Virus record (IMG/VR): IMGVR_UViG_3300038465_000091
Coordinates: 159,507 to 223,506 of that record
Direction: 5' to 3' (one strand)
Length of the DNA: 64,000 nt
This document shows, one piece after another, positions 1,496 to 28,147 of this stretch. The notes under the pieces are model-generated. The model was not told the DNA's origin and ran no database searches. It was given only the letters and a program-made list of their open reading frames with translations. The position numbers were made by a program, and so were the translations under genes. Numbering within the stretch: position 1 is the first letter of the stretch; the number at the start of each line of letters is the position of its first letter.

Positions 1496-2947
1496 ATGAG
1501 CAAGTTGATGGAGCAACGCAAAGCGGCACGAACAAAGAAGTCAACGGTTCTTTTGTCCATCGATACGGCTAAGGATGCAGTCAATATCGGTAAGTCGCTG
1601 TTGAACGCAACCCAAGCTGAGGGTCAAAATGATCCGCAACTGGAACAAGCTGTAAGGCACTTGGAAGGGCTGTTAGCTAGTCAGCCAGATCAAATGCAGT
1701 CAGAAGGGGCAGTGAACGTCGAAGATTATTTCGACGATACTATTTTGCCTGAAGTAGCACGTCAAGCCAAAAACGAGGTAGATATGATCGCACAAAAACG
1801 CAGGGAAGCACGTCCCGCACAAGGAACTCAGCAACAGCCAGCTTTGGCATCGGATGAGAAATCCGCAGCCACGGGCACCGATGCTTTCGTGACCGACCGC
1901 GACGAATCGGGTAACCCCAAGACCCCCGAAAAGGCCGAAGTTCCCCGTCTCGCAGCCAAGAAGAAAGAAGCACAGCCCGAAGCTGTGCCCCCAGTCCCTC
2001 CCGTCGCAGCCCCAGCCGTTGGTGGGGGTGGTGGTTCGCTCGACGCCCTCTTCGCCAAGCTGCCGTCTGACTTCCTCGCCGATCTGGTGAAGAAGCTGAC
2101 CAGCCTCGAAGGTTTTGAACAGGACAAGGACGTACAGGCAGCCGTTGAGAATTTGGCTGGAAAACTCCAGCAACGTCCTGTTGAAGCGGCTCCCGTTCCC
2201 GGTGCTCCTGCCGCTGCTCCGACCGCCTCCGTAAAGAAGGGCGGCGACTTTGGCGGTAAGCAAGCTCCTCCGTTCGGTAAGAAAGACGATGACAAAAAGG
2301 ACGACAAGAAAGCATCCGTTGCCCGTCTTGGTTTGAATTTTGTCGCAGCCGAAAAGGTTGCCGTAGCCCCTCCGGGTCGCGAAGATCAGGTGAAGGCACT
2401 CAAGAAAGAAGACGTAGATAACCCCTACGCCGTGGCATGGGCCAGCTACAACAAAGGCGACAAGCAGGGCGCTCTTCGGGCCGCTCATGCGGTGATCGCG
2501 AAGTTCGCTGCCGCTGGTTTCTTCACGTGGGATCAGGCAACTGGCGACGTAACTGAGTCTGGCGGACGCACTCCAGAAGTTCAAGAAGCACACAGCAAGA
2601 TTGATGAAGCTCCCGCCCATCTGGAACGTCCTGATACGACGCTCCCGATCAAATTAGCAGGCGAGATGACGGCTCAAAAAGCTGTAAAGGAGGCGGAAAG
2701 GCTAGGCAACGAGCTTAAAAAGACCTACCTTGACGCCAAATCAATCTGTACGGTGAACGATAGCCGTCCAGTACGTGAGTTTGTAGAGAGTATCTTCCGT
2801 GCGGGCGACATGGCTGATGAGGCGGTTAAGACCCTCAACAAGCAAGTCATGCAGGAAGAATCCGAAGAAGCGGCTGCAAAAGTCCGTGAGAAGAGCAATA
2901 AGAAGTCCGCTCTCAACGATTTAACGTTGGCAGCTTCGGCTGAGTAA
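1496..2947 (+). CDS. Putative internal head protein with K-x-A motifs
   Basis: GAGGA RBS then ATG at 1496. Charged/Ala-Pro-rich; contains EKSAA, KKKEAQ, KKAS, EKVAV, DKQG, KKSA and the motifs DAFVTDRDESGNPK and APPGREDQVKALKK..VDNPYAVAW. Confidence 0.65.
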   Translation: MSKLMEQRKAARTKKSTVLLSIDTAKDAVNIGKSLLNATQAEGQNDPQLEQAVRHLEGLLASQPDQMQSEGAVNVEDYFDDTILPEVARQAKNEVDMIAQKRREARPAQGTQQQPALASDEKSAATGTDAFVTDRDESGNPKTPEKAEVPRLAAKKKEAQPEAVPPVPPVAAPAVGGGGGSLDALFAKLPSDFLADLVKKLTSLEGFEQDKDVQAAVENLAGKLQQRPVEAAPVPGAPAAAPTASVKKGGDFGGKQAPPFGKKDDDKKDDKKASVARLGLNFVAAEKVAVAPPGREDQVKALKKEDVDNPYAVAWASYNKGDKQGALRAAHAVIAKFAAAGFFTWDQATGDVTESGGRTPEVQEAHSKIDEAPAHLERPDTTLPIKLAGEMTAQKAVKEAERLGNELKKTYLDAKSICTVNDSRPVREFVESIFRAGDMADEAVKTLNKQVMQEESEEAAAKVREKSNKKSALNDLTLAASAE

Positions 2948-3961: not shown

Positions 3962-5653
3962 ATGACGCCTAGAAACCCACTCCTACAAAAAAGAGCACTC
4001 GACGAAACCATGGTCATGTGGAACGACCCTGATTACGCCGAAAATCAACACCACTCCGATCCCAGCTACACCACTCAAAACGGCAAGGATTACGCGGGAC
4101 GCGGCACCACTGAGAATGAAGAGGGTGCGCTTAAAGATGGCATCCCCGCAGGTCTCCTGTCGGTTGAACTCGGCAAAGAAGCCGCAGGCAGTACGGACCC
4201 CGTTGACTTGTTAAGGCGAGCGGCGGATACCCTGCAAGGATATTGCGCCGAGGTCAATGGCGACATGAACGATAGCTTGGCGACGGAGATAGAGGAGTAT
4301 CTCGCCCAACAGTCTCAACCCAAGCAAGCCGATACGGGCAACCCTCACGTCACTACGATGCCAAGTGCGCCAGCCCCAGTCGATCCCGATAACGCAACGT
4401 TCTTTAAGGAAAGTGAACCGAGTTCGCCGTTCACTGACGCTGAAGAAAAAATTAACGCCGCAGCCGCAGGTAGTGGTTTCCACTATGTGGGTCGCGTTAC
4501 AGACGGGACTACACTGTGGTACAGGGGGAAAGACGAACGTTTGTCGTTTGACCCTAAGACTGGAAACGTCACGCACCTGAGGGACGGGAAAGTTGTATCG
4601 GAATGCCCCATTAACCAACTCGGACGTATTAAGTCTGCCGCCGATAGCTTTCATGCGGCCCTGAAGAAGGGACTTAAGCAGGGCGCAATCCGCCCATCTC
4701 CCCACACTGTGTTTGAAAACAAAGTTGACAATGCCACGGGGAAACAGCCCATCGCACCCACGGAACCTTCCGATGATGAGGTGATGAAAGCTCAAAAAAC
4801 CCTCGAAAACGCTGGGGTTGGCGATCAAATTGGTGTCAACGCTTCGAAGACCGTCGAGGTTAAGGAGCTTGGAACCAAGATGAGCGGCTTCACTGGCGGC
4901 GGGCCGTTTAGCTGCATGGATTGCGTGCATCGTACTCCGCACTCTAAGAACGCCAAGGGCGAAGAAGTTGATTCGTGCAAGCATCCCGATGTGATGGCCG
5001 ATCCCGAGCTTGCAGATCGCAAACTCCCTGACGGAACTATCGAAGTTGACGCTGATGATTGCTGCCGTTTTGTAAGGCCGACGAAGAAAGAATCCGAGAA
5101 GGAAGCGGCGGTCACCAAGACCTACGGCACTGGCACACCTCCGGGCGGAACGCCCAATGATCCGAGTATCGACGATGAAGACGCGGACGAAGGGAAGACC
5201 TCTAGCCAAAAGCGAGCGGATGTTGATATTCACGAAACGCCGAAGTTCCTCCCGCCTCGCGATGACATTCGTCGGCACCTCGACAAGGATGTGCAGGATG
5301 AAATCACCGATGAGGTGATGGAAGGCGTGAAAGACGCATCGGAAGAGGGCGAATACTACTTGGATAAAGTTCGTGACATGAAGAACGAGGCCAAGGAAGC
5401 GTTCATGCAGGATGGTTCCATGCAACAAGAGGCTCAGGATGCGGGTATGAGCATGGAAGACCTGTGGAAAGAAATCGGTGGGGAGTTCACCGAGAACTAC
5501 TATATTTCGGCCTACTCCAAGCAGGGGTCGATTGCGGTTGAAGAGGGGTTTAAGTGCCCTAACTGCAAGAGCCTGAAGGGGAAACCAGTCGAAGATGGTT
5601 TGGACGACACGGTAAGCTTGCGAGAGTGTTTAACTTGCGGGAGCTTTTACTAA
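3962..5653 (+). CDS. Mosaic putative internal head protein (K-x-A delimited modules, Zn ribbons)
   Basis: 563 aa with QKRA, GKEAA, PKQAD, FKES, IKSAA, EKEAA, QKRAD, VKDAS, SKQGS separating unrelated segments; CxxC motifs (CMDC; CPNC...CLTC). Confidence 0.6.
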   Translation: MTPRNPLLQKRALDETMVMWNDPDYAENQHHSDPSYTTQNGKDYAGRGTTENEEGALKDGIPAGLLSVELGKEAAGSTDPVDLLRRAADTLQGYCAEVNGDMNDSLATEIEEYLAQQSQPKQADTGNPHVTTMPSAPAPVDPDNATFFKESEPSSPFTDAEEKINAAAAGSGFHYVGRVTDGTTLWYRGKDERLSFDPKTGNVTHLRDGKVVSECPINQLGRIKSAADSFHAALKKGLKQGAIRPSPHTVFENKVDNATGKQPIAPTEPSDDEVMKAQKTLENAGVGDQIGVNASKTVEVKELGTKMSGFTGGGPFSCMDCVHRTPHSKNAKGEEVDSCKHPDVMADPELADRKLPDGTIEVDADDCCRFVRPTKKESEKEAAVTKTYGTGTPPGGTPNDPSIDDEDADEGKTSSQKRADVDIHETPKFLPPRDDIRRHLDKDVQDEITDEVMEGVKDASEEGEYYLDKVRDMKNEAKEAFMQDGSMQQEAQDAGMSMEDLWKEIGGEFTENYYISAYSKQGSIAVEEGFKCPNCKSLKGKPVEDGLDDTVSLRECLTCGSFY

Positions 5654-5681: not shown

Positions 5682-6584
5682 ATGCCTTTTACGAAGATAG
5701 CTAACGCTGCGTTACAAGAACCAGTCATCGCACCCGAGGACTGGATCAAGCTGCATGGAAAGCACGTGTTCGGGCAGAAGTCCGCCTCGGGCTCCGCAGC
5801 CGCCGCTACCTTCAGGAAGTCCGCTGACACCTCGAAATACCTCTTGTCCCACTGCACCATTATGGCAAGTGTGATGGTCGAGGCCGACCCTTACGATTAC
5901 CTAATCAAGCCAGAATGCAGTCACCTCGTCAACAACAACGATGACGCATGGACGAACGAAGTTCTGAAGCTCAGCCACAGCAGCTTTGTTGGTGCTTTCA
6001 ACTTCGTGGAACATTTCCAGAATTCCAAGTATGCGAAGGGTCACATTCTCGACGCCATTCTTCGCAAGATCAAGTTGAACGGCGATGGCTCTGTGTGGGT
6101 CTATTTCTGCGATATCCTTGTCGCCACGGACCTCGGACACGAGAAGCTGATTGACGACATCCGCAGCGAAAAGGTCAAGTACCTGAGTATGGGCTGCGTG
6201 ACCGACCTCGTAATTTGCAGCTATTGCGGTGCTCGCGTCACCGATCAAAATACCTACTGCAACCATCTGTCGTATCAAAAGGGCATGTTCCTGACCGACG
6301 ACGATGGCATTGCACGTCGTGTCGCCGAGCTTTGTGGGCACAAGACAATGGAAAACGGCGGCGTGAAGTTTGTGGAAGCTTCGTGGGTTGCTACACCAGC
6401 ATTCCCCGGGGCTGCAAAACGTAACACGGTCTCCGAAGAGTGGGAAGGACCCCGCACCAAGTACACCAAATCGTCCACCGCTGGGAAGATGGCAAAAATT
6501 GCCAGTGTGAATGATGAATTCGAAACCCTTAATCTAGGTGATGCGTTAATGAACGCGAATTTGCACGGAAGGTTGACTCGGTAA
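5682..6584 (+). CDS. Prohead (capsid maturation) protease with Zn-binding insert
   Basis: VNNNDDAW...FNFVEH...KGHILDA...YLSMGC...CSYC...CNH...FVEASWVATPAFPGA fits the HK97/herpes-type Ser-His protease pattern; sits directly upstream of scaffold, decoration and capsid genes. Confidence 0.75.
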   Translation: MPFTKIANAALQEPVIAPEDWIKLHGKHVFGQKSASGSAAAATFRKSADTSKYLLSHCTIMASVMVEADPYDYLIKPECSHLVNNNDDAWTNEVLKLSHSSFVGAFNFVEHFQNSKYAKGHILDAILRKIKLNGDGSVWVYFCDILVATDLGHEKLIDDIRSEKVKYLSMGCVTDLVICSYCGARVTDQNTYCNHLSYQKGMFLTDDDGIARRVAELCGHKTMENGGVKFVEASWVATPAFPGAAKRNTVSEEWEGPRTKYTKSSTAGKMAKIASVNDEFETLNLGDALMNANLHGRLTR

Positions 6585-9043
6585 TGGCCGATCAGAAGAC
6601 AACGCACTACAATGGCTACACTCTGAGTTACGCCAGTCAGCATGAGTCAGTGATTATTAAGTTGGACGGCAAGAAAGTTAAAACAGCACCAAACCTAGAA
6701 AAGGCGAAGGCGTGGGTGAATCAAGCGCCGGGAAGCTTTAGTAAGGGCGAGAAAAAGGCTGGTACGCTAATGGCAAAAGAAATAGTTCATTGCACAAAGT
6801 GCGGCAACATGATCGAGTCGCTCAAGCCTGAAAAATGTGAGCATTGTGGTGGCAAAGCAAAAGTTAAGAAGGGCTCTATGAAATCAAAACTAGCAGCAGC
6901 AAAAGCGGCACTTGACCGCAAGCAGGCCGATTTGGACGCTATTGACGACCAGATCATGGGTCTGGACTCTGGTATCCCAATGGATGCCCCATCTACCCCC
7001 GAATTTGACCTCCTCACTGCGAAGCGCGAAGAGCTTGAAGAAGAGATTCGCACGATGCGCGAAGGCGTTCAGTTTATCTCCGAGTGGGAAAAATTGAAGG
7101 GCGGACAGTGGTCGGAAGGTATCAAATCCCAGTTGGACGGCCTCGACTCAGAAATCGCCAATATAGCTGGCAGCGAGGGTGCCGTTGAGTCGGGTATGGA
7201 TATGGGAGCCCCGATGGGCGATCCCCTAGCCGCCCCGCCAGTTCCCGAAGCCCCAGTAGCACCAATGGGAGACGTGGCCCCTGAAGCCGCCCCAGCACCA
7301 GAAGTGGCACCCGATGCCGCCGCACCAGAAACACCCGCACCTGCCTTGGAACCTCCGATGGCGAGCGCAAAATCCGCAGTAAATAAGAAAAATAACTATC
7401 AAACCTCTCAAAAGAGGGGCAATATTGCCTCTCCCCAGATGAAAAAGGAAGGCTCCAACATGGCAAATCCTACAGCTACCAAGCCCTCGAACTTGAAAGA
7501 GAAGCTTGCTGAACTGAAAACGAAGCGCGAGACGATCAAGAGGGAAGCACAGGTTCGCACCGCTGCGGCGTATACAATCGCCAACACGATGCTGCCGGGT
7601 GCCCCCGTCGAAAAGCGTCAGGCATTCGCCTCTTCGCTACTCCAAGGTAACGACACCAAAGCCCTCGTTGCTGCCCTCCGTCAAACCGCGATCAACGCCC
7701 ACTACTCCAAGGTCGCCGAACAATTCAAGGAAGTCCACAAAGTCGAACTCAATGATCTCCTCGAAGACCCGTCCGTTCTGAAGTCCGAGCGTTCGGCTGT
7801 CGAAAAGGAAATCAAGGGTGACGCGAAGTCGGCTACCTCGAAGAAGGCCGATGACCGCAAGGACGCAGGTCCGCAGACCGAGACGTACAACGACGGTCGT
7901 GGTTGCGGCGGCGGGACTCACTCTGAGCCGAAGGAAATGGAAGCCTCGAAAGCTGGCGACCGTCCCGACGCTGGCGAGAAGCCCGGTCAGACCGTGAACC
8001 TCAGCGACGGCAAATCTGCCGCCGCAAAGAAGTCAACATGCAAGGACGGCGAGAAATGCGCGGGTTGCGAGAACTGCAAGTCCGCCGCCAAGAAAGCCGC
8101 CGAGAAGAAATGCGACAAGTGCAAGGGTGAATGTAAGTGCGCTTCCAAGGTCGTTGCCAAGGCAAAGAAGGCCGACGAGCCGCCGATGGACGCCCCCGCA
8201 CCAGATGCAGGCGCACCGCCGATGGAAGACGAAATGGGCGATGCAGGTGCTCCGTTGGATGAAGTTCCTCCGATGGACGGTATGGAAGGTGAAGCTCCAG
8301 TCGATGACGCTGGCGCGATCCTTACCGACGAGAAGAAGATGGTCGTTCAGGAGGAAATCGACACCGTTAAGGATGCCGTTCAAGCTCTTGAGCAGGAACT
8401 TCTTGAAGAGAACGAAGAAGAGATTCCGCTTGCTCTTGAAGAAGGCGAACCCTCCGAAGAAGAGCTTGACCTTTCGTCCGTGTTCGATCAGGGCGAGATG
8501 GAAGACAAAGCCGCTTCGCTTGCCAACGAAGGTGAAGATCACACCGCTGGCGACGACGGCGATGGTAACTTCTTCGCCCCAACATCTGCCGCAGGCATGG
8601 AATCAGTGCTTGACGACAGCGGTATGCAGGTAGCCAGTATCGAGAGCTATTTCGATATGCAGGGCTCCGATGCCGACCCACTGTACAGCTTGATCGCATC
8701 TGAAACCAAGGAAGCAGCATCCGTCGCTGGTTTTGACGTGCTTGAGTCCTTCACTGGTGAAGTGGCGAACAAGATGAAGCAGGACACCACTGGCGAAGCC
8801 CGCGACAACGAAGGCGACCACGACGAAGACCTCTTCGTCGAAGCAATGAAGGACATCAAGCCTGAGGAACAGGGTGCAAAGCGTACCCCGCAGGATGCAC
8901 GTCCCGAGTTGCAGGCTCCGAAGTCCGCAGCCGCAAAGACCGCAGCCAAGGCTCCCACAGGCAGCATCAAGCGTGTCCGCCCTGTCGTAGCCTCACCGAA
9001 AGCCGTTGACATCGCTACCGCGTTGTTCGGCTCCGAAGAGTAA
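6584..9043 (+). CDS. Capsid scaffolding / prohead core protein
   Basis: Coupled to the protease gene (TAATG); very acidic, coiled-coil and low complexity; canonical position between protease and capsid. Confidence 0.65.
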   Translation: MADQKTTHYNGYTLSYASQHESVIIKLDGKKVKTAPNLEKAKAWVNQAPGSFSKGEKKAGTLMAKEIVHCTKCGNMIESLKPEKCEHCGGKAKVKKGSMKSKLAAAKAALDRKQADLDAIDDQIMGLDSGIPMDAPSTPEFDLLTAKREELEEEIRTMREGVQFISEWEKLKGGQWSEGIKSQLDGLDSEIANIAGSEGAVESGMDMGAPMGDPLAAPPVPEAPVAPMGDVAPEAAPAPEVAPDAAAPETPAPALEPPMASAKSAVNKKNNYQTSQKRGNIASPQMKKEGSNMANPTATKPSNLKEKLAELKTKRETIKREAQVRTAAAYTIANTMLPGAPVEKRQAFASSLLQGNDTKALVAALRQTAINAHYSKVAEQFKEVHKVELNDLLEDPSVLKSERSAVEKEIKGDAKSATSKKADDRKDAGPQTETYNDGRGCGGGTHSEPKEMEASKAGDRPDAGEKPGQTVNLSDGKSAAAKKSTCKDGEKCAGCENCKSAAKKAAEKKCDKCKGECKCASKVVAKAKKADEPPMDAPAPDAGAPPMEDEMGDAGAPLDEVPPMDGMEGEAPVDDAGAILTDEKKMVVQEEIDTVKDAVQALEQELLEENEEEIPLALEEGEPSEEELDLSSVFDQGEMEDKAASLANEGEDHTAGDDGDGNFFAPTSAAGMESVLDDSGMQVASIESYFDMQGSDADPLYSLIASETKEAASVAGFDVLESFTGEVANKMKQDTTGEARDNEGDHDEDLFVEAMKDIKPEEQGAKRTPQDARPELQAPKSAAAKTAAKAPTGSIKRVRPVVASPKAVDIATALFGSEE

Positions 9044-9101: not shown

Positions 9102-9254
9102 GGGGGCGTAGATGGTACCCAGATAGCCGAGCAAAACCCATTTCATTTTCTTCTCGTCGTATTCGTCGGATCGGAGTTCCATCTTCGGACAAATCAAACC
9201 TATCGTGTGTGCAACCTTCATCTGCCCGCAATTGGCGCACCGTGGTTCAGTCAT
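9093..9254 (-). CDS. Small Cys/His protein (53 aa), leaderless, absent from the ORF track
   Basis: MTEPRCANCGQMKVAHTIGLICPKMELRSDEYDEKKMKWVLLGYLGTIYAPKK*. ATG lies exactly 6 nt after TATAAT (9266-9261), as at other promoters here. Confidence 0.6.
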   Translation of the reverse strand: MTEPRCANCGQMKVAHTIGLICPKMELRSDEYDEKKMKWVLLGYLGTIYAPKK

Positions 9255-9289
9255 CTTCCCATTATATCACTACTACCCGAATCTTTTAT

Positions 9290-10982: not shown

Positions 10983-11942
10983 ATGGCAAATCTTTCTCGT
11001 ACACAACAGCAGACGGCTATGCTTGGACAGTTGCTCAAGACCGCAGGTGGTCGTCAAAAATTAGCGGCGTCGTTGGGACCGTCCCTCCGTCGTCGTCGTG
11101 ACTATATGAGCATTGCTCGTAAGGCTCTTATGGTCGAAACTCTTCCCGATGGCGCACTCCCCATCTACGACAAGGAATTCGATGTTAGCGCGATGACTGT
11201 GGGCTCGACCCCCGGCTCGTCTTTCGTTGAAGCCTTTGTGGTCGGTGAAGAAGGCGGCGACATTGTGCGTGTGACCAAGCCAAAGCGTGTCACGGTTCCG
11301 ACGTTTGAAATCGTGTCCAACCCCATGATCCCGATCACCCAGATCAAGGAACGTCGTTTCGATCTCGTTGCTCGCTCACTCAACCTCGCAAAGGCTGAAG
11401 TAGGCGCGGCAGAAGATGGTTACGTGTTCAATCTGTTTGACGGTGTTGCGGCGGGCGCAGTCGGCCATGCACCAAACGATCCGGTTTACAACCCCGACAT
11501 TCCAATCAACGCCCCCATCGACATCAACTCGCTGGCGGATGGATTTGGTCAGGTTGCACGCCACGATCTGTCGGTTGCTTTCATCTTCTTCAATCCTCGC
11601 GATTACACGGATTTGTTGAAGTGGACGCAGCAAAACATCGACCGTGAAACACAGCGCAAGCTGTTGAAGACGGGCGTCATGGGCTATCTCTGGGGCGCAA
11701 CGCTCCTCCAGTCTCGTAAGGTCGGCTACGGCTGCATCTATATTCTGGCGGACGCTGAGTTCCTCGGCGTAATCCCAGAACGTATTCCGTTGACCGTGAT
11801 GAGTGCCGACCGTCCTGATTTGAGGCAAATCGGATTCTCGATATTTGAGAATTTGGGCTTCCTCGTCTTCAATCCTTCAGGCGTTCAGCGGTTGACCGTT
11901 AACGGTCGCTTCAACGCGGCTGCCAACTTCGGCGAGAACTAA
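10983..11942 (+). CDS. Major capsid protein (HK97 fold)
   Basis: AAGGAG RBS; RRDYMSIARKALMVETLPDGALPIYDKE...RVTVPTFEIVSNP.I...KERRFD...AAEDG...GYLWGA...GFSIFENLG; followed by a strong terminator. Confidence 0.88.
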   Translation: MANLSRTQQQTAMLGQLLKTAGGRQKLAASLGPSLRRRRDYMSIARKALMVETLPDGALPIYDKEFDVSAMTVGSTPGSSFVEAFVVGEEGGDIVRVTKPKRVTVPTFEIVSNPMIPITQIKERRFDLVARSLNLAKAEVGAAEDGYVFNLFDGVAAGAVGHAPNDPVYNPDIPINAPIDINSLADGFGQVARHDLSVAFIFFNPRDYTDLLKWTQQNIDRETQRKLLKTGVMGYLWGATLLQSRKVGYGCIYILADAEFLGVIPERIPLTVMSADRPDLRQIGFSIFENLGFLVFNPSGVQRLTVNGRFNAAANFGEN

Positions 11943-12694: not shown

Positions 12695-12732
12695 AGTTAT
12701 TCATCTACCTAACCATTAGGTGGGGGCGTCTT

Positions 12733-21046: not shown

Positions 21047-24000
21047 ATGAAGCTGGACGCCACACAAGCGGCGGCTGCCAAGCTTTCCCACCTAATCGAG
21101 CCCGGGCGAACCGTCTATTCCACAGACGGCCACGCCTATAGGGTCTTGTCAAAGATCGCCGCTGGCGGCTCCTTGAGCTTCCGACTTGCGAACCTTCAGG
21201 GACAGCCGGTTCCAATCCCCGCAGACTTCTCCCCGATTGACGGGGCTCGGATGCGTTTCGCGTCCTTCCTGAAGTTCGCATTCAACAAAGACCTCACTGC
21301 GATTGTCAACTCACTGATTGAACAGGCGGGGCTCCCCACTGACCCAGCGATGAACTGGGCTGGGTGGTTTCAAAAGGTCTATGGCGAAATCCTAGCATCT
21401 GTTACCCCCAACTTTGATCTCCAAGACGAGATCATGTACAACACCGTCATTAAGCTCCTGATGATGCGTAAGGACAAGGACGGAAAAACACTTCTGGAAA
21501 ACGCTGCCGACAAAATTTCAGGTTTGTCCAGCGGCATTAACAAGATAAAGCGTCAACTTCGTGATCCGAACTTGACTCCAGACGAAAAGAAGACGCTAGA
21601 GAATCGACTCCACTGGCAGGAAAAAGTTAAGGCTGATCCTGTGGAGAAACAAGTCAGCAGCCTCCTGAAGAAAACTTTCGAGTATTACGCACGACATCAT
21701 GCTCGTGTGGATGCGAAAAATTACGCCTATTCGGTGCATACCCCCAGCCATCGCCTCGAAACGGAAAATATCGAAGACGTTGCTATCGAACAACCCACAC
21801 CATCTGGAGAGGGAACGTATAATATCCTTGATACCGAGGAACACGGCGTGGCTCCGGGCGTCGGACTGGGCGAGTCCGAACGCGACATCATGCAGTTCAT
21901 CGATCAATTCCAAGAGTGGGTGAGGGGCAAGGAGACCCCGAAATCCGCTCCTAACTATGCCGAATTGCTCAGGATTTACTGGGATCAGGCACAGCGAATT
22001 GACGATGTTAAGATCAGCGATCTGACTCAAGAGTGGATTCGCCGCACAGGTTTGAGCTTTGACTCCCTGAAGCAGTATCGGGATAAGCTCGGCATCCTGA
22101 TTCGAGATTTCGTCTACGAGAACAAAGTCCAACTGGGCAACTCCTACAAGTTCGTGGACTTGCTAAAGCACATGTTCCCGCCGCCAAAGCAAAAAGCACG
22201 TCCCGCCAAGGCTTCGTCCGACCACCATCACGACCGAACCGAATGCAGAAAGTGCGGCAATGTCCAGACTTGCCGTTGCCCTGCGACCAAGGTCACGTCC
22301 TATGTGGCTTCCTGCGACAACTGCAAGACGGCGGATGGTTTGGAAGCACGAGTGCTTGATCCGAACTGTCCTGAATACAAAAAATACGCCGATGATTTGA
22401 TCCGTCGCTTCGGTCAGACATCGCAGGTCTCCGAGATGCTGGGACAATTCGAAGATGAGCATTTCCCCACTTGTGTACACTGCCAGCAATACAATCAGGA
22501 TTGGCGGGCAGGTAAGGTATCAGCGGCAAAACCCAAGTGCCCCCATTGTGGCTCTGACGATTACGGCTTGATGCCCACGGACTTCGAGACCGCCAAGTGC
22601 AATGGTTGCGGCAAGAACTGGAATCATGGCATCGTCAAGGGTATCAATGATCCGAAGGAAGCTGCTCGCACGGCGGATGATGAAGGAGGGGGTAAAACGT
22701 GCGAAAATTGTGGGAGTTATTACGGTGGGTATACATGTCTTAATTGTGGGCGAAAAAAGAAGCTGGAAGAAGAGGTAGATCGTACCAGCAAGGAACTCAA
22801 GAAGTTCCCCAAGGGACCAACAGGCATGACGCCCGACGATGTGAAGGCTACTCCCGAATGGCAGGCGGCTAAACGTAATTACGGTCAAGCCTTCGCCAAG
22901 CTGCGAGAGTTCAATTCCAAAAAGTGTGCTGCCGATGATCCGACTCGTGACACCCTTGACGAGACGCTGAAGTATGACAACCCAGACAAGGACACCAAGG
23001 GGTTCCACGACCCCGCCGACCTCGGTCAATGCGCCTGTGAGTGGGATGAATGTCCGCTGGGTCACCAAGCGGGTGGGTGCCAGAATCCCGCAGCCCACAT
23101 GCTTGAAATCTATGGATACAAAACCCGCTACTGCCAGCCATGCACCGACGCAACTATCGAGTACATCCGATTGGAACAAGGCACTGGCGATCCCGATGAC
23201 ACGGTTAAGATTCTGTCCTCCGCACATACTGCTGGTGCCCCGTACTGCGACGGTTGTGATCGTCTGAAGGCAAACTGCATCTGCGAAGGCTGCGAGTGCC
23301 CAGAAAATAAAAACGCAGGCAAGTGGGGCGATAAAATCAAGAAGATGGAAGCTCGACGTGGCGAGTTCATCGAGAAAACTCTTAAGAATGCCGTAGGGCC
23401 AACGGAAGAGGATGATCTTGAGATGGCTAGGCGTGGTCCGATTCAATACGAGGAACTACCCGAAATGGAAACCCGAATTCGCCCACGAGAAGAACAGTCG
23501 AAATTTCCGACTCCTCGACCTACTACACGGCGTAAGGAGGGGATGCTCGGTCATGATTTTGTGGATGCCGATCAGCAAGCGATTCGCCCCGACATTACGC
23601 CGGGTGACACTGGGCGCTTACCTCATGGACGCACGCAGGGATCAGTTAAAGAATCTGCGGAACTTGCTGGTCGCGGCGGGGATAAAGATGACGTGCGCGG
23701 TGCGGGCGATCTGTGGCGTGAAGAGTTTTACCAAAGCGGCAATGCGCCCCCAAAGATTGCGACATCAGGTAAATGGAAAGTTCTTCTGCGGGATTCCAAG
23801 GGGAATCAGCGTGAGCAGGAGGTTTCAGGCGTAAATTACGGCTCTGCCGAACGTGCTGTGAGAAAATATATGAAGAATGGTGAAAGGGTTGTGTCGATGA
23901 CTATCGCAAGCAAGACGGCTGCCCCCGCTCCTGCGGCACCCGCACAGGCACAAGCACCAGCGCCCGCCCCAGCACCAGCAGCCACTCCCGCCCCTCCAGC

Positions 24001-26950
24001 GCAAGCGCCAAGCGCGAACACGGTAGTTGCCCCACCGCCCGGAACGCCGATTGCTCTTCCCTCGGGACAAGGAGAAGATACACCGGAAAAAAGAACAGTT
24101 CCGCCAGAAATCCCGAACAGGAAGTACCACATGACAAGTAAAAATTCCGCACTTAAAACCGAACAGAATACGCCAGAGATGGAAGCTCAGGTAGCTCAAC
24201 TGGCACAAACGAACCCGCTCACGGAGATTCACGAGAACTGCAACCCGTACTTCGAGCACGGGCAATGGTGGGTTGTCTGCGGGCCGTGCGGAGCCACTTG
24301 GTCGGTCGTTGATGTGGGTCAGTTCATCGGAGATGAGGGCGACATCGACCTTGAAGAGATTGATAACGGTGACGGTTCTTGTGCGGAGAATTTCCACGAG
24401 TCTGCCGATCACAGCAGCCCACGTCAGGGCTTCATCTATCAGGCGGAAATGTGGTGCCCGACTTGTGCGAAGGAGATCGCCGCCGACATTCAGAAGAACT
24501 ACCCTAAGCAGGTCCCCGCCGATCCAACGGATGAGTATTCTTATGATTCCGACAGCTACCCGAAGGGACCGTTCTTCGAGGAAGAATCAGACGCTCCTGA
24601 GCACTGCGCGGGCTGCCACATTTTCCTTGAGAACCCTCTGACCACGCATGGTCAGGAGTACATGCAGTCGATGGTTGACGAAGCTCTGGCGAAGGGACGC
24701 GGCGAAGAGCCGCACATCAAGGAATGGATGGACTTTTACGGCTATCATCCTGACACTGAGGGAGCCGAAGACGAACATGAGGCGTCCGCCGCTTCCGACA
24801 GAATCAATGCGATGCCGCAGCGTGGCAAGCCAAAGACTCCCGAAGAGTTGGGGCTGGTTGAGAAATCCGATACGGAACTCCGTCTTGAGGGGATTCCTCC
24901 GCGTCCTAAGAAAACCGCCGATGGCGCTTCGTTGCTTGAACCAGAAGTTAGCTTCGAAGATAAACCAGACCCCTTGCTCGACAACAGTAATAATTTGCAA
25001 AACTACAGCTATGCACCGCAGAAAGACACAACAGATAGTAGGGACACGGCCACGCTGGACGACAACATCGAAATTTTGAAACGTTACGGCTATGCCCTTT
25101 TCAGTGGTGGAAAATCGGGTGGGAAACAATTCTGGAAAAGTCCCATTGGAACTGTAGTTATCATGTCCACCAGCGGTGAGTGGATGTTTGGTGCGGACGG
25201 TACCAGAGGAACGACCAGCACGGATTTAGACAGTAAGCTTTTGAAATACCACCACAAAATGGTCCCAAAAGCGGGGGCGTCCAAAACCGCCGAAATTGAT
25301 ATGGGTCAGCTTGAGAGCGTGCAGGATCGAAAAGATCGCCTGAGCAAGCCCGACAAGAGTCCGATGTACGGCGTGACACTTCTTCGCGAACTTTCAGCCC
25401 CCGGCATTCCAAAGGGTGAAGTGATCGTGTTCGGTTATTACTACCCAGATGGGCAATGGGGCAAGCAGCAGCTTCAATGGTGGACAACGATGGCGAAGAC
25501 CGAGTATGATAGCACCGTCACTCAGGTCAAACGTCGCAGTCGCGGTACGAATCAGGAAAAGTCAACGGCCCTGTACGAGTCGTTGAAAGGACGTGGTACG
25601 GCGGTTGAGCCGGGTACGTCGTCTGACGCTATCATCGAGCAATTCAAGACGCAGAAGGAATCATCCATGGAAAACAAACAGGCTGCAATCGCACAACCCA
25701 CGTCTGGCGAGGACGAAGGCTATTACGTCAAGGTCACCTACACTAAGGGCGGTATTGATCTGAGCCCGACTGAGAATCTTCTAAGGGAAGTCGCCGAGGA
25801 GCAAATGCAGGATGAAAGCGGCAACTCGACTTATGAGTTCGCCCACAACATTGAGCTTGACGACATCTGGGAAATGATGGAGGATTTCTTCACCAATGGC
25901 TGGGAGAAAGTAAATCCCGAGGATATTGGTGCGCTAACTGACGGAGAAATCTTCTCCGATCCCAACGGCAACGTCTACTGGCATGAGCGGTATCAGATCG
26001 AAAGCATGACCGATGAACTGAAGGCAGGCAACACGGTGTTCATGCAGTACGGCGGCAATCTGTTCGATGAGGAAGATGAAGAAACGCCTGCTCCCGATCC
26101 GAACCAGATGAACCTCCCACTCCAGTCTTCCAAGAAGGAAGCCACGGGCGAGATGAGTCAGTCCGAGGCTGATGACCGTGAGGCATGGCCGATGCACCAC
26201 GCTATCGCTGACGCTCTGGGCGGCACGGTCAAGGCTTTTGACCAGTATCAAGGTCCGTACGTTCTTGTGGGCTCTGAGGCTCGCGGACAGGGCACCTATG
26301 CTCCCGCAATCCCGATGAAGGGTACCGTGCGCCTCTGGGTACAGGCGGACGAGGGTAGTGACGGGGCATTCCTGACCGTCTACAACGAAGACAACGATAA
26401 AGTTAGCGAGCCGTTCCATTGGGAAGACATGGAAGGCGCGGTCAATGCCGCCATGAGCGTAATGGGCGATGAGCCCGAGACAATCGAAGCCTCCACCAAG
26501 CAGGCGGAACTTGACATCCCCAAACCGGACAGTTGGGGGTGTACTTGTTCAGATAAAGGAGCACGCGGACAACACAAGTCCAATTGTCCTAAGGCTCCGA
26601 AGCAACGTGGCGAGTACCACGGCGCGAGTAAGCAAGCAGCGCCCGGCGACGGTGGACTACAACGCGACGTGCAGAACCAGTACGAGAACCACCCCCTGAT
26701 CGAAATGCTGTGGGGTTCCCTGAAACGTGACCCAGCGAACAAAGATCGCGTCCAGACGGCATGGGGCACCAAGACGAAGCAGGGTTTGGTGCTCAGTGTA
26801 GCTCGCGCCATGAAGGAAAGCCCCGTCTCGGGTAAAGAAAGCAGTCAGAAATGCAAATGCGGCAAACCGACAGCTAAAGGCGATCACCGCTGCGAGGACT
26901 GCCGCTCAAAACAGCATTCCGAGGCAGAAAAAGCGACTGGCGTAGAATAA
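21047..26950 (+). CDS. Giant mosaic polyprotein 1 (1967 aa), putative virion cargo
   Basis: AAGGAGG RBS; about 390-aa helical N-terminal domain followed by more than 20 short unrelated modules (many CxxC) separated by KTA/KEA/KQA/KES/HES/HEA. Confidence 0.75.
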   Translation: MKLDATQAAAAKLSHLIEPGRTVYSTDGHAYRVLSKIAAGGSLSFRLANLQGQPVPIPADFSPIDGARMRFASFLKFAFNKDLTAIVNSLIEQAGLPTDPAMNWAGWFQKVYGEILASVTPNFDLQDEIMYNTVIKLLMMRKDKDGKTLLENAADKISGLSSGINKIKRQLRDPNLTPDEKKTLENRLHWQEKVKADPVEKQVSSLLKKTFEYYARHHARVDAKNYAYSVHTPSHRLETENIEDVAIEQPTPSGEGTYNILDTEEHGVAPGVGLGESERDIMQFIDQFQEWVRGKETPKSAPNYAELLRIYWDQAQRIDDVKISDLTQEWIRRTGLSFDSLKQYRDKLGILIRDFVYENKVQLGNSYKFVDLLKHMFPPPKQKARPAKASSDHHHDRTECRKCGNVQTCRCPATKVTSYVASCDNCKTADGLEARVLDPNCPEYKKYADDLIRRFGQTSQVSEMLGQFEDEHFPTCVHCQQYNQDWRAGKVSAAKPKCPHCGSDDYGLMPTDFETAKCNGCGKNWNHGIVKGINDPKEAARTADDEGGGKTCENCGSYYGGYTCLNCGRKKKLEEEVDRTSKELKKFPKGPTGMTPDDVKATPEWQAAKRNYGQAFAKLREFNSKKCAADDPTRDTLDETLKYDNPDKDTKGFHDPADLGQCACEWDECPLGHQAGGCQNPAAHMLEIYGYKTRYCQPCTDATIEYIRLEQGTGDPDDTVKILSSAHTAGAPYCDGCDRLKANCICEGCECPENKNAGKWGDKIKKMEARRGEFIEKTLKNAVGPTEEDDLEMARRGPIQYEELPEMETRIRPREEQSKFPTPRPTTRRKEGMLGHDFVDADQQAIRPDITPGDTGRLPHGRTQGSVKESAELAGRGGDKDDVRGAGDLWREEFYQSGNAPPKIATSGKWKVLLRDSKGNQREQEVSGVNYGSAERAVRKYMKNGERVVSMTIASKTAAPAPAAPAQAQAPAPAPAPAATPAPPAQAPSANTVVAPPPGTPIALPSGQGEDTPEKRTVPPEIPNRKYHMTSKNSALKTEQNTPEMEAQVAQLAQTNPLTEIHENCNPYFEHGQWWVVCGPCGATWSVVDVGQFIGDEGDIDLEEIDNGDGSCAENFHESADHSSPRQGFIYQAEMWCPTCAKEIAADIQKNYPKQVPADPTDEYSYDSDSYPKGPFFEEESDAPEHCAGCHIFLENPLTTHGQEYMQSMVDEALAKGRGEEPHIKEWMDFYGYHPDTEGAEDEHEASAASDRINAMPQRGKPKTPEELGLVEKSDTELRLEGIPPRPKKTADGASLLEPEVSFEDKPDPLLDNSNNLQNYSYAPQKDTTDSRDTATLDDNIEILKRYGYALFSGGKSGGKQFWKSPIGTVVIMSTSGEWMFGADGTRGTTSTDLDSKLLKYHHKMVPKAGASKTAEIDMGQLESVQDRKDRLSKPDKSPMYGVTLLRELSAPGIPKGEVIVFGYYYPDGQWGKQQLQWWTTMAKTEYDSTVTQVKRRSRGTNQEKSTALYESLKGRGTAVEPGTSSDAIIEQFKTQKESSMENKQAAIAQPTSGEDEGYYVKVTYTKGGIDLSPTENLLREVAEEQMQDESGNSTYEFAHNIELDDIWEMMEDFFTNGWEKVNPEDIGALTDGEIFSDPNGNVYWHERYQIESMTDELKAGNTVFMQYGGNLFDEEDEETPAPDPNQMNLPLQSSKKEATGEMSQSEADDREAWPMHHAIADALGGTVKAFDQYQGPYVLVGSEARGQGTYAPAIPMKGTVRLWVQADEGSDGAFLTVYNEDNDKVSEPFHWEDMEGAVNAAMSVMGDEPETIEASTKQAELDIPKPDSWGCTCSDKGARGQHKSNCPKAPKQRGEYHGASKQAAPGDGGLQRDVQNQYENHPLIEMLWGSLKRDPANKDRVQTAWGTKTKQGLVLSVARAMKESPVSGKESSQKCKCGKPTAKGDHRCEDCRSKQHSEAEKATGVE

Positions 26951-26992: not shown

Positions 26993-28147
26993 ATGGCAAA
27001 CAAAGTGAAGAAGGCAAATCGTGAGACCGTCCGTAAGGCTATCGTAGCCCGTCGCGAAGCTCGCAAGCAGGAAAAAGCCGCGAATTATGCAAAAATGCGC
27101 GAATGCGCGAAGTCTCCAGCGAAGTTCGCCAAGGCCCTTGACGAGCTTGTAGCGAAGACCGCACGTCAAGCCTACAGCATGGACGCCCTCCGCGAAAATC
27201 TCGGATTGGTGAAATTTGCCAAGGAAGTTCCCGCCAAGGTCCGCATCGCCGCCGCTAAGAATTACGGCAAGAAGTTTGTCCGTATCGCCGAAGAGCAGCC
27301 AGACATTCTGGCTGACGCCCTCCAGCAAGCCTACAAGGGCTTGGATGAGCAGGCAGCGGCCATGGAAATCGCCGCCGAAGCTCTGGGTATCGATCTGGGT
27401 GCCTCGCCTGCTGAGAAGGCATTCACCGACGAAGGCAAGCACGAACTTGAGCTTGGCGAAGACAAGGGCGAAGAGAAAGCGACAGAAGAAGGTCCTGATT
27501 TCGGAGCCGAAGAAGAGACCGAAGCGGAAGAAGGGGCCGATAAATTTGTATCGGATTCTGAAGCGGAGGCCGAACCTTTGCCCGAGGAAGATAAAGAAGC
27601 CAGTGGTTCCGACGCTTTTAGCACCGACCGCGACGAAGGTGGGTCGCCGAAAGCACCACAAAAGACTCAGAGCCCACAGGCTCAGGGCGAAGCGGCAAAG
27701 CAGTCGGCAGCGCAAGGCGCTGGCAAATTCGTAAAGGAAATCCCGCAGGCTCAGGGAAAGACAGCGGTCACCGAAGCAAAGCATTGTCCCGAGTGTAAAT
27801 ACCCGGGGAGAACGGTTGAACCTGAGACTGGCAAATGCCGTCATTGCAAAAAGAAAGTGATGGAGCCGTTCGACAAGAAGGCCGCAATGGGCAAGAAAGA
27901 TTTCATCGCCTTGGCGGATGCAATCAAGAACATGAGCGTTGGACCTGATGAGAAGCGAAATATCGCTGAAGGTCTGTGCGAGACGTTTCGCGCATCCAAC
28001 CCACGTTTCATGAAAGATCGTTTCATGGACTACGTTATGGGCCTCGGCGGTTCGAGTGGCGGTAAGGTGAAGCCGCAAGGAACGCCACGCCCGCGCAAGG
28101 GCGTCATTGATCCGTATGCTAGTGCTGGTGGGCATCCTTTGGAGTAA
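26993..28147 (+). CDS. Putative internal head protein
   Basis: AGGAG RBS; shares DAFSTDRDEGGSPK with ORF 1496; after KKAA carries the module MGKKDFIALADAIK...NPRFMKDRF. Confidence 0.65.
   Translation: MANKVKKANRETVRKAIVARREARKQEKAANYAKMRECAKSPAKFAKALDELVAKTARQAYSMDALRENLGLVKFAKEVPAKVRIAAAKNYGKKFVRIAEEQPDILADALQQAYKGLDEQAAAMEIAAEALGIDLGASPAEKAFTDEGKHELELGEDKGEEKATEEGPDFGAEEETEAEEGADKFVSDSEAEAEPLPEEDKEASGSDAFSTDRDEGGSPKAPQKTQSPQAQGEAAKQSAAQGAGKFVKEIPQAQGKTAVTEAKHCPECKYPGRTVEPETGKCRHCKKKVMEPFDKKAAMGKKDFIALADAIKNMSVGPDEKRNIAEGLCETFRASNPRFMKDRFMDYVMGLGGSSGGKVKPQGTPRPRKGVIDPYASAGGHPLE

What the first reader, a model, noticed from the sequence alone, without database searches (positions are those of the whole stretch)
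1880..1933. Shared short motif DAFxTDRDExGxPKxPxK in two otherwise unrelated head-type proteins
Seen: KSA-ATGT-DAFVTDRDESGNPKTPEK here and KEA-SGS-DAFSTDRDEGGSPKAPQK at 27611-27664, each a few residues after a K-x-A site. Inference: a capsid-targeting or scaffold-docking peptide analogous to the T4 capsid targeting sequence.
Basis: partly seen in the sequence, partly recalled or inferred. Interest (0 to 1): 0.6.

Follow-up and report, generated by a model that had tools for sequence, protein, structure and literature searches.

The report
Shared docking-type peptide, jumbo phage proteins
Two unrelated virion-module proteins of a 223-kb soil jumbo phage share a roughly 30-residue peptide that is the best-conserved part of both protein families across hundreds of related phages; it is most likely a common docking tag for particle assembly, but its binding partner is still unknown.

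Summary
The 18-residue match at 1880-1933 and 27611-27664 is the core of a ~35-residue short linear motif. Its consensus is G-x-D-A-[FWY]-[VST]-T-D-R-[DN]-E-x-G-x-P-K-x-P-x-x-x-[ED]-[VI]-P-[RQ].

- **Occurrence here:** it appears exactly twice in the 223,506-bp genome.
- **Where it sits:** both copies lie in disordered linkers of proteins with no other detectable homology.
- **Conservation:** it is the most conserved block of both families, present in 84/87 and 47/47 homologues. Half of the second family carry two tandem copies.
- **Level of selection:** third codon positions drift, so selection acts on the protein.
- **Distribution:** a profile search of 1.84 billion proteins found it only in these two families and their fusions.
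- **What the carriers are:** P0001 is encoded between the tail tube gene and the prohead protease/capsid block. P0002 is the detached C-terminal module of the upstream 1,967-aa giant protein, and the two are one polypeptide in many relatives.
- **Loss:** the nearest cultured relative, Tunturi_5, keeps the flanking domains of both proteins but lacks both motifs.

No test identified the function. The fold and family searches found nothing, and the one complex prediction gave no answer. My best reading, at about 0.4, is a shared docking peptide for incorporation into the particle. It works like a capsid-targeting sequence but is not a member of the T4 family.

The parts
1496..2947 (+). P0001 gene (483 aa from the conserved MSKLMEQRK start): family A carrier of the motif. 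The AlphaFold2 model has a helical N-domain (aa ~20-106), disordered Pro/Ala-rich linkers holding the motif, small helical modules, and a C-terminal helical hairpin that ends in ...LAASAE.
   Evidence: ORF and translation. 87 homologues found. Family alignment A2. AlphaFold2 model m1c91e0ff3f86: pLDDT above 90 for aa 20-106 and 394-471, below 50 for 111-134 and 144-181. No PHROG or Pfam match. The Tunturi_5 orthologue gp328 is labelled 'DNA ejection protein' and matches only the middle and C-terminal parts.
1865..1969 (+). Motif copy 1, extended form AATGTDAFVTDRDESGNPKTPEKAEVPRLAAKKKE. The family A tail is EVPRLAAKKKE.
   Evidence: This is the highest-information block of family A: 3.2-3.8 bits per column against a mean of 2.63. 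R136, P145 and R152 are invariant in A2.
21047..26950 (+). Giant 1,967-aa multi-domain protein. It is the upstream partner of P0002, and the two are fused into one polypeptide in many relatives. It ends in ...KATGVE.
   Evidence: ORF. Proteins of 1,056-1,936 aa combine its N-terminal ~400 aa with the P0002 N-domain and a C-terminal motif. The order giant then P0002 is kept in G001, G002, G004 and Tunturi_5.
26993..28147 (+). P0002 gene (384 aa): family B carrier of the motif. It has a helical N-domain (aa 10-160), an acidic disordered linker, the motif, a short second motif, a zinc-ribbon insertion and a small helical C-domain. It is a separate gene here, with two in-frame TAA stops and an AGGAG sequence ahead of its ATG.
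   Evidence: 47 homologues. Alignment A3. AlphaFold2 model m07cea62915df: pLDDT above 90 for aa 10-130 and 301-350, below 50 for 162-210.
27596..27700 (+). Motif copy 2, extended form EASGSDAFSTDRDEGGSPKAPQKTQSPQAQGEAAK. The family B tail is [IS]PQAQG, and the nearly invariant K-E-A lies just upstream.
   Evidence: K201, R213 and P219 are invariant in A3, and E202 and A203 are at least 90% conserved. This is the top conservation block of family B: 3.3 bits against a mean of 2.14.
27728..27757 (+). Second, shorter shared motif FVKEIPQAQG. It reads like the long motif with its central RDExGxPKxPxxxx loop removed.
   Evidence: It occurs only once in the genome. It is present in 27/47 family B and 11/87 family A proteins, in one or two copies by this count (also visible in alignments A2 and A3).
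5682..6584 (+). Prohead maturation protease. Included as context and as a candidate partner.
   Evidence: phrog_18299, E=4e-15. 62% identical to Tunturi_5 gp331, annotated 'head maturation protease'.
10983..11942 (+). Major capsid protein. Included as context and as a candidate partner.
   Evidence: phrog_2522, E=1e-42. 71% identical to the Tunturi_5 major head protein and 35% to phage G gp27. 94-95% identical in the motif-bearing genomes G001, G002 and G004.

Best explanation
The two 18-residue matches are the core of a ~35-residue short linear motif. It lies in intrinsically disordered linkers of two unrelated proteins of the virion module of a soil jumbo myophage.

I propose that it is a shared docking peptide. 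Both proteins would use it to bind the same site on the assembling particle. That site could be the prohead core, the inner shell surface, the portal, or an adaptor such as the co-occurring 563-aa Cys-rich protein. Docking would load both proteins into the virion, and tandem copies would add avidity. The two proteins are P0001 (whose Tunturi_5 orthologue is annotated 'DNA ejection protein') and the giant protein together with P0002.

**Shown:**
- the motif exists;
- it is under strong selection at the protein level in both families;
- it lies in disordered regions;
- its carriers are domain-shuffled;
- it is restricted to these two families.

**Inferred:** that the two proteins are virion-internal, that the motif binds a partner in trans, and what that partner is.
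For: - **Conservation.** The motif is kept in 84/87 family A and 47/47 family B proteins, down to ~35% overall identity. It is the most conserved block of each family and is flanked by poorly conserved low-complexity sequence.
- **Protein-level selection.** Pairwise identity by codon position is 0.76, 0.80 and 0.46 over 30 distinct DNA copies.
- **No other homology.** hhalign probability outside the motif is below 1%.
- **Disorder.** AlphaFold2 places both copies in low-confidence linkers between confident helical domains, with only a local turn at TDRDExG.
- **Restricted distribution.** An exhaustive profile search of 1.84e9 proteins gives 100 hits. Apart from a few short fragments with no detectable flank (56-131 aa) and one repeat-protein false positive, all are homologous outside the motif to P0001 or to the P0002 N-domain.
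- **Modularity.**
  - 25/47 family B proteins have two tandem copies.
  - In 1,056-1,936-aa giant fusions the motif lies a median of 33 residues from the C-terminus.
  - Modules are exchanged among P0001, the giant protein and the DarB-like protein.
- **Joint presence and absence.**
  - G001, G002 and G004 each have one carrier of each family. The partial G003 contig shows only the family B one.
  - Tunturi_5 keeps the C-terminal part of P0001 (gp328), its N-domain on a separate protein (gp348) and the P0002 N-domain (gp345), yet lacks the motif in all of them.
- **Gene context.** The order is sheath, tube, P0001, two ORFs, protease, a scaffold-position 819-aa ORF, then the capsid protein. From my own knowledge, this mirrors T4 genes 18-19-20-67-68-21-22-23.
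- **Protease-type C-termini.** P0001, the 819-aa ORF and the giant protein are the only three of 223 ORFs that end in [SAG]-x-E. That is the cleavage motif of giant-phage prohead proteases (PMC5694885). It hints that these proteins belong to the protease's world.
- **Precedent.** Conserved targeting peptides on otherwise diverse internal proteins are known in T4 and P1 (PMC3012670, PMC9024508).
Against: - There is no direct evidence of binding. The one complex prediction (capsid protein, protease and motif) scored ipSAE 0.00, which the tool rates as no answer.
- Neither protein is shown to be in the virion. There are no PHROG, Pfam, PDB or fold matches. The Tunturi_5 labels come from the Phold annotation tool the paper names, and the paper reports no mass spectrometry.
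- Only two families carry the motif, unlike the broad cargo sets of T4.
- Tunturi_5 has a 71%-identical capsid protein and a 62%-identical protease and manages without the motif. So the motif is dispensable in that lineage, or its partner is something Tunturi_5 lacks.
- P0001 lies next to tail genes, so a role in the tail or in ejection is not excluded.
Confidence: 0.4

Rival explanations
1. The motif is a recognition element for the prohead protease. It would act as an exosite-binding or processing signal that directs maturation cleavage of both proteins. For example, cleavage could release the N-domains or trim the C-terminal tail of the giant protein, and the motif would not determine incorporation.
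For: - A prohead protease is encoded 2.7 kb downstream of P0001.
- P0001, the 819-aa ORF and the giant protein end in [SAG]-x-E. In family A, 66/80 full-length members end this way and 10 more have it followed by an extension. This matches the A/S/G-x-E specificity of giant-phage proteases (PMC5694885).
- K-E-A just upstream of the motif is nearly invariant in family B.
- In T4, the targeting peptide and the cleavage site are adjacent (PMC5694885).
Against: - No column of the motif holds a conserved [SAG]-x-E or [LIV]-x-E. The best case is A-P-E in 44/119 sequences, with Pro at P2.
- Known cleavage motifs are about 3 residues long, not a 30-residue invariant block.
- Tandem duplication of a cleavage signal has no obvious use.
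- The complex prediction that included the protease gave no answer.
Confidence: 0.17
2. The motif acts after ejection. On this reading both carriers are injected proteins, and the peptide binds a host (probably Acidobacteriota) factor or envelope component. Its loss in Tunturi_5 would then reflect a different host target.
For: - The Tunturi_5 orthologue of P0001 is annotated 'DNA ejection protein'.
- The carriers share modules with a DarB-like protein, whose P1 namesake is packaged and delivered into the host (PMC9024508).
- Short motifs in disordered regions are a common way for viral proteins to bind host proteins (general knowledge).
- The motif is lineage-restricted and was lost from both proteins together.
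Against: - The motif is near-invariant across phages whose other proteins are only 35-50% identical. These phages probably infect diverse hosts, and host-interaction peptides usually evolve fast.
- No host is known for any motif-bearing phage.
- No similarity to any solved peptide-binding complex was found.
Confidence: 0.15
3. The motifs bind each other, or bind the carriers' own domains. For example, a hairpin could pair by beta-augmentation and tether P0001 to the giant protein/P0002 as one complex, with no third partner.
For: - Both copies are present together or absent together in a genome.
- Many family B proteins carry an A-type copy (ending VPRVAA) followed by a B-type copy (ending IPQAQG) in cis.
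- AlphaFold2 draws a minimal beta bridge across TDRDExG in both proteins.
Against: - The models have low confidence there (pLDDT 53-65) and show no intramolecular docking.
- The G003 contig shows only the B-type carrier, but that contig lacks the whole sheath-to-capsid block, so this is uninformative.
- No test of motif-motif pairing was possible.
Confidence: 0.1
4. The match is a chance similarity or a neutral remnant of recombination between low-complexity linkers, with no function.
For: - Both copies lie in low-complexity, recombination-prone linkers.
- A zinc-ribbon module was clearly exchanged between the families: P0141 is 83% identical to P0002 over that stretch.
- The two copies share a 15-nt identical DNA core.
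Against: - The motif is the most conserved block in both families across more than 130 homologues, with third-position drift.
- R is invariant, and T, D and two P residues are at least 90% conserved, in 119 segments.
- BLASTP gives E=5e-8 for the pair.
Confidence: 0.01

Closest known systems
T4 capsid targeting sequence (CTS) of internal proteins IPI-III and Alt (Mullaney & Black 1996, as described in PMC3012670 and PMC5694885)
   Same: A short peptide is conserved while the rest of the carrier proteins diverge freely. The carriers are proposed to be capsid-internal, ejected proteins. A prohead protease of the Glu-specific kind is encoded nearby.
   Different: - The T4 CTS is a 10-20-residue N-terminal propeptide that binds the scaffolding core and is cut off at an L/I-x-E site.
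- This motif is ~35 residues, internal or near the C-terminus, often duplicated, and has no conserved Glu-type site.
- Only two families carry it.
- Targeting has not been demonstrated.
N-terminal packaging signal of phage P1 DarB (PMC9024508)
   Same: It is a signal on a giant antirestriction protein that directs the protein into the capsid. This window also encodes a DarB-like 1,895-aa protein (58086-63773) that shares modules with the motif carriers.
   Different: - The P1 signal lies in the first 30 residues.
- The DarB-like protein here has no copy of the motif.
Long N-terminal propeptides of giant-phage (SPN3US, phiKZ) ejection proteins, with conserved N-termini in paralogues gp53/gp54 (PMC5694885)
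   Same: Jumbo-phage internal proteins carry regions of about 100-130 residues ahead of the mature part. Short stretches are conserved between otherwise diverged proteins, and a CTS-like role is proposed for them. P0001 has a ~130-residue N-terminal part ahead of the motif.
   Different: - Those signals are shared by paralogues; here the carriers are not homologous.
- Their cleavage at A-x-E was mapped by mass spectrometry. There are no proteomic data here.
Encapsulin cargo-loading peptides and the C-terminal shell-binding tails of the HK97 protease and herpesvirus scaffold (general knowledge, not tested with the tools)
   Same: A short terminal peptide after a disordered linker docks cargo to the inside of an HK97-fold shell. 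In the giant fusion proteins the motif lies a median of 33 residues from the C-terminus.
   Different: - No sequence resemblance.
- In P0001 the motif is internal.
- Binding to the HK97-type capsid protein got no support (no answer).

Membership tests
T4-type capsid targeting sequence | N-terminal propeptide of about 10-20 residues | tested here: not met
   The motif starts at residue ~125 of 483 (P0001) and ~202 of 384 (P0002). The median relative position is 0.25 in family A, 0.58 in family B and 0.96 in the giant fusions.
T4-type capsid targeting sequence | Removed by the prohead protease at a Glu-type site (L/I-x-E, or A/S/G-x-E in giant phages) directly after the signal | tested here: not met
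   No fixed column with [SAG]-x-E or [LIV]-x-E appears in 119 motif segments. The best is 44/119. Actual cleavage cannot be tested with these tools.
T4-type capsid targeting sequence | Shared by otherwise unrelated or diverse internal head proteins | tested here: inconclusive
   It is shared by two non-homologous families, but by only two. Head-internal location is inferred from context, not shown.
T4-type capsid targeting sequence | Sufficient to carry a foreign protein into the capsid | not testable with these tools
   This needs GFP-fusion packaging experiments.
Cargo-loading / shell-docking peptide of HK97-fold compartments | Short peptide at a terminus, after a flexible linker | tested here: inconclusive
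   This is met in the giant fusion proteins (22-153 residues from the C-terminus, median 33) and in short family B members. It is not met in P0001. The linkers are disordered in the AlphaFold2 models.
Cargo-loading / shell-docking peptide of HK97-fold compartments | Binds the interior of the HK97-fold shell protein | tested here: inconclusive
   The complex prediction with the capsid protein, protease and the 35-mer scored ipSAE 0.00 against a mark of 0.32. The tool's verdict is no answer.
Prohead-protease cleavage site (A/S/G-x-E, giant phages) | Conserved small residue at P3 and Glu at P1 | tested here: not met
   The conserved acidic column 25 (E or D in 89/119) has K, Q or R at P3.
EF-hand / DxDxDG calcium loop (considered because of D-R-D-E-x-G) | Liganding D/N/S at loop positions 1, 3 and 5, and Glu at position 12 | tested here: not met
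   Loop position 5 is K, S, N, D or A, and position 12 is E in only 73/119.

The most novel reading that the evidence does not exclude
The motif is a portable, clade-wide loading tag. On this reading any protein that carries it is recruited to one receptor site inside the prohead of an abundant family of soil jumbo phages (probably infecting Acidobacteriota) and is later injected. Copy number would set the dose, and the Tunturi_5 lineage would have switched to another mechanism. The tag would be an internal or C-terminal, duplicable counterpart of the T4 capsid targeting sequence, evolved independently.
Probability: 0.3. Interest if true: 0.7.

Novelty: new variant of a known kind. Interest (0 to 1): 0.5.

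Why it matters
How jumbo phages select and load their large sets of internal and ejected proteins is largely unknown outside T4, P1 and the phiKZ/SPN3US group.

This motif offers a precise, 35-residue, sequence-defined handle in a very abundant soil phage clade. The clade's capsid protein family alone has more than 1,400 database members. The motif marks two non-homologous proteins, so it should point to a common receptor.

That makes one question directly testable by peptide pull-down or fusion packaging: what do these two proteins share? If the motif proves to be a loading tag, it could be used to deliver proteins with these phages. If it proves to be a host-binding or protease signal, it identifies the relevant partner. 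The text search of the held papers found no mention of the motif.

Tried and rejected
1. **Complex prediction.** The capsid protein (alignment A4), the protease (A5) and the 35-mer (A1) were folded together. The score was ipSAE 0.00, and the verdict was 'no answer'. This is not evidence for or against binding.
2. **Family, structure and sequence searches on both proteins.**
   - PHROG and Pfam found nothing for P0001. P0002 gave only one sub-threshold Pfam hit (14.5 bits against a cut-off of 25).
   - Foldseek against the PDB (P0002 model) and against the viral BFVD library (P0001 model) found nothing significant.
   - Profile searches of PDB sequences with A1, A2 and A3 found nothing significant. 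The only curiosity is an insignificant resemblance of FVTDRD to the NHL-repeat strand-turn of a designed propeller (E=5.6).
   - The ESM Atlas gave TM scores of about 0.2.
3. **An idea I withdrew.** I first thought G003 keeps the motif despite a different head module, which would have ruled out the capsid protein as partner. Whole-contig comparison shows that the G003 contig simply lacks the sheath-to-capsid block. It begins at the homologue of window 13620.
4. **Phylogenetic profiling for a partner.** 16 ORFs are present in G001-G003 and absent from Tunturi_5 and LR745208. Most of those annotated are metabolic: endonuclease VII, phosphoesterases, ribonucleotide reductase. The unannotated ones near head genes (563 aa, 201 aa, 262 aa) are only weak leads, because the motif-negative genomes are also the more distant ones.
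5. **K-E-A as a general cleavage signal.** KEA is only mildly enriched, at 27 observed against 16 expected genome-wide, so I did not pursue it.
6. **A conserved cleavage site at the giant/P0002 junction of fused homologues.** None was found.
7. **Calcium-loop reading of DRDExG.** Rejected from the column statistics.
8. **Hidden homology of the two N-domains.** Rejected by hhalign.
9. **A nucleic-acid-level element.** Rejected because third codon positions drift.
Full report
**1. The observation**

- Window 1880-1933 (+) encodes DAFVTDRDESGNPKTPEK inside the ORF 1496-2947 (P0001).
- Window 27611-27664 (+) encodes DAFSTDRDEGGSPKAPQK inside the ORF 26993-28147 (P0002).
- BLASTP of the two proteins finds only this stretch: 21/39 identities, E=5e-8.
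- The window is the last 64 kb of a single 223,506-bp contig. A six-frame scan of the whole genome finds the motif at these two places only.

**2. What kind of genome this is**

- PHROG matches identify a tail sheath (2-1036), a prohead protease (5682-6584), a major capsid protein (10983-11942), a GIY-YIG homing endonuclease (12691-13629) and a tail-fibre-like protein (19127-19789).
- The capsid protein is 71% identical to that of Tunturiibacter phage Tunturi_5, a 309-kb jumbo myophage of Acidobacteriota from tundra soil. It is 49% identical to uncultured phage LR745208 and 35% to Bacillus phage G (PMC11924767).
- The local gene order is sheath, tube-position ORF, P0001, a 221-aa ORF, a 563-aa ORF, protease, an 819-aa acidic coiled-coil-like ORF, a 201-aa ORF, a decoration-position ORF, then the capsid protein.
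- Tunturi_5 is colinear here. From my own knowledge, this order parallels T4 genes 18-19-20-67-68-21-22-23.
- The portal gene lies outside the window, at genome 3770-6394.

**3. The motif is a conserved short linear motif in two families**

- Database searches found 87 relatives of P0001 (family A) and 47 of P0002 (family B), down to ~35% identity.
- The motif is present in 84/87 and 47/47 of them. The three family A exceptions are fragments.
- It is longer than reported, at about 35 residues. The consensus is xxxGxDAFVTDRDExGxPKAPEKxEVPRxAxK. R is invariant, and T, D and two P residues are at least 90% conserved, in 119 segments.
- The two families have different tails. Family A ends EVPR[LV]AAKKKE. 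Family B ends [IV]PQ[AS]QG and is preceded by a nearly invariant K-E-A.
- In both families the motif is the most conserved block and is flanked by poorly conserved low-complexity sequence.
- Over 30 distinct DNA copies, pairwise identity is 0.76 and 0.80 at codon positions 1 and 2 but 0.46 at position 3. Selection therefore acts on the peptide, not on the DNA or RNA.
- Outside the motif the families are unrelated at profile level: hhalign probability is below 1%.
- AlphaFold2 models built from the family alignments show confident helical domains joined by long low-confidence linkers. Both motif copies sit in those linkers, with only a local turn at TDRDExG.

**4. Distribution**

- A profile of the 35-residue block was scored against 1.84 billion representative proteins. 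It gave 100 hits at E<=1e-3, of which 52 were at E<=1e-10.
- I masked the motif and compared the new hits with every ORF of this genome. Every informative hit is homologous to P0001 or to the P0002 N-domain. The exceptions are a few short fragments and one coiled-coil repeat false positive.
- Eleven hits are giant proteins of 1,056-1,936 aa. Each consists of the N-terminal ~400 residues of the window's 1,967-aa ORF (21047-26950), variable middle parts, the P0002 N-domain, and the motif a median of 33 residues from the C-terminus.
- P0002 is therefore the detached C-terminal module of the giant protein.
  - In this genome they are separate genes, with two in-frame TAA stops and an AGGAG before the ATG.
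  - The order giant then P0002 is kept in G001, G002, G004 and Tunturi_5.
- Other hits are mosaics that combine parts of P0001, the giant protein and the DarB-like protein.
- 25/47 family B proteins carry two tandem copies: an A-like copy ending VPRVAA, then a B-like copy ending IPQAQG.
- A shorter related peptide, FV[KS][DE]IPQ[AS]QG, occurs in 27/47 family B and 11/87 family A proteins.

**5. Presence and absence by genome**

| Genome | Size | Motif carriers |
|---|---|---|
| G000 (this phage) | 223.5 kb | one family A, one family B |
| G001 | 463 kb | one family A, one family B |
| G002 | 456 kb | one family A, one family B |
| G004 | 170-kb fragment | one family A, one family B |
| G003 | 317 kb | family B only |
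| Tunturi_5, LR745208, phage G | 309-498 kb | none at E<=1 |

- The table rests.
- The G003 contig lacks the whole sheath-to-capsid block, so the absence of a family A carrier there is uninformative.
- In Tunturi_5 the flanking domains survive without the motif.
  - gp328 has P0001's middle and C-terminal parts.
  - gp348 has a P0001-like N-domain.
  - gp345 is a compact fusion of the giant N-terminus and the P0002 N-domain that stops just after that domain.
- The two copies are thus kept or lost together.
- LR745208 lacks both families altogether.
- The motif-bearing genomes have capsid proteins 94-95% identical to this one, although P0001 is only 42-51% identical.

**6. Attempts to find the function**

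- Neither protein matches any PHROG family, and neither has a Pfam hit above the curated cut-off.
- Foldseek searches of the PDB (P0002 model) and of viral models (P0001 model), profile searches of PDB sequences, and the ESM Atlas all returned nothing significant.
The tool rates that as no answer, so it is not evidence.
- Phylogenetic profiling found 16 ORFs present in motif-bearing genomes and absent from Tunturi_5 and LR745208. Most of those annotated are metabolic. The 563-aa Cys-rich ORF (3962-5653), the 201-aa ORF (9209-9814) and a 262-aa ORF next to the portal are weak candidate partners.
- The motif has no fixed [SAG]-x-E or [LIV]-x-E column, so it is not itself a Glu-type protease site.
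- One side observation bears on location. Only three of 223 ORFs end in [SAG]-x-E: P0001, the 819-aa ORF and the giant protein.
  - 66/80 full-length family A members end that way, and 10 more have it followed by an extension.
  - This matches the cleavage motif of giant-phage prohead proteases (PMC5694885).
  - It is circumstantial support that these proteins are handled in the prohead.

**7. Interpretation**

The evidence fits a peptide that binds a partner in trans. The pattern is:
- an invariant short peptide in disordered linkers of fast-evolving, domain-shuffled proteins;
- duplicable, and often terminal in fusions;
- confined to two non-homologous proteins of the virion module;
- kept or lost jointly.

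I rank the readings as follows:

| Reading | Confidence |
|---|---|
| Shared docking peptide for incorporation into the assembling particle | ~0.40 |
| Protease recognition element | ~0.17 |
| Host-factor-binding peptide acting after ejection | ~0.15 |
| The two motifs (or carriers) binding each other | ~0.10 |
| Chance or neutral remnant | excluded by the conservation data |

**8. Comparison with known systems**

- Functionally, the closest analogues are:
  - the T4 capsid targeting sequence;
  - the P1 DarB packaging signal;
  - the long propeptides of SPN3US/phiKZ ejection proteins (PMC3012670, PMC9024508, PMC5694885);
  - from general knowledge, encapsulin cargo-loading peptides.
- The motif is not a member of the T4 family. 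It is not N-terminal, it is not followed by a conserved cleavage site, and it is about three times longer.
- A full-text search of the held literature for the motif string found nothing.
- I therefore rate it a new variant of a known kind. The existence of the motif is certain. Its mechanism is unproven.

Noticed in passing
window 21047-26950 and 26993-28147: The 1,967-aa giant ORF and P0002 are in the same frame. They are separated by two TAA stops (26948, 26978) and an AGGAG before the ATG. In at least 11 database relatives the two are a single polypeptide of 1,056-1,936 aa, so this is a gene split here or a fusion elsewhere.
   Followed up: yes
window 2930-2947, 9026-9043, 26933-26950: Only three of 223 ORFs in the genome end in [SAG]-x-E: P0001 (...LAASAE), the 819-aa scaffold-position ORF (...FGSEE) and the giant protein (...ATGVE). 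66/80 full-length P0001 relatives end this way, and 10 more have it followed by an extension. It matches the A/S/G-x-E cleavage motif of giant-phage prohead proteases.
   Followed up: partly
window 27728-27757: A second short shared peptide, FVKEIPQAQG, occurs in 27/47 family B and 11/87 family A proteins, in one or two copies by the count. It reads like the long motif with the central RDExGxPKxPxxxx loop deleted.
   Followed up: partly
window 27782-27880: P0002 residues 264-296 (HCPECK...CRHCKKKVMEPFDKKA) form a zinc-ribbon insertion that no other family B member has. It is 83% identical to a stretch just upstream of the motif in P0141, which has a family A-type motif tail and lies next to a p221 homologue. 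This points to module exchange between the two families.
   Followed up: partly
window 3962-5653: This 563-aa Cys-rich ORF lies just upstream of the protease. Its core (aa ~290-390) is 58-80% identical in G001 and G003. Other parts of the ORF also match in G002 and G004, and it has no match in Tunturi_5 or LR745208. It thus co-occurs with the motif. It also contains KEAAGSTD, which resembles the N-terminal flank of the motif.
   Followed up: partly
window 10983-11942: The capsid protein is exceptionally conserved: 94-96% identity in genomes whose sheath (61-68%), portal (76-85%) and P0001 (42-51%) have diverged much more. More than 1,400 database proteins match at E<=1e-5.
   Followed up: partly
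window 12691-13629: A GIY-YIG homing endonuclease gene (phrog_314, E=7e-43) lies between the capsid-protein block and the next structural genes. It has no match at this position in Tunturi_5.
   Followed up: no
window 58086-63773: This 1,895-aa protein is homologous at its N-terminus to Tunturi_5 gp350, annotated 'DarB-like antirestriction protein'. Short modules of it recur in motif-bearing proteins of other phages (P0179, P0209, P0210, P0219, P0227).
   Followed up: partly
window 28643-29299 (-) and 29901-30860 (-): Two ORFs just downstream of P0002 on the opposite strand carry DPPY-like motifs (FVDPPYQ; SDFPYD) typical of N6-adenine DNA methyltransferases. This is read from the translations only.
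   Followed up: no
G003 (IMG/VR contig of 316,945 bp), loci L094-L109: CheckV rates this contig 99% complete, yet it lacks the entire sheath-to-capsid block. It starts exactly at the homologue of window 13620, so it is probably a broken assembly of a larger genome.
   Followed up: partly
genome 129482-130198 (outside the window): This ORF has weak similarity to part of the major capsid protein: 41% over 61 residues to the Tunturi_5 capsid protein and 33% to phage G gp27. It may be a capsid-protein paralogue or fragment.
   Followed up: no
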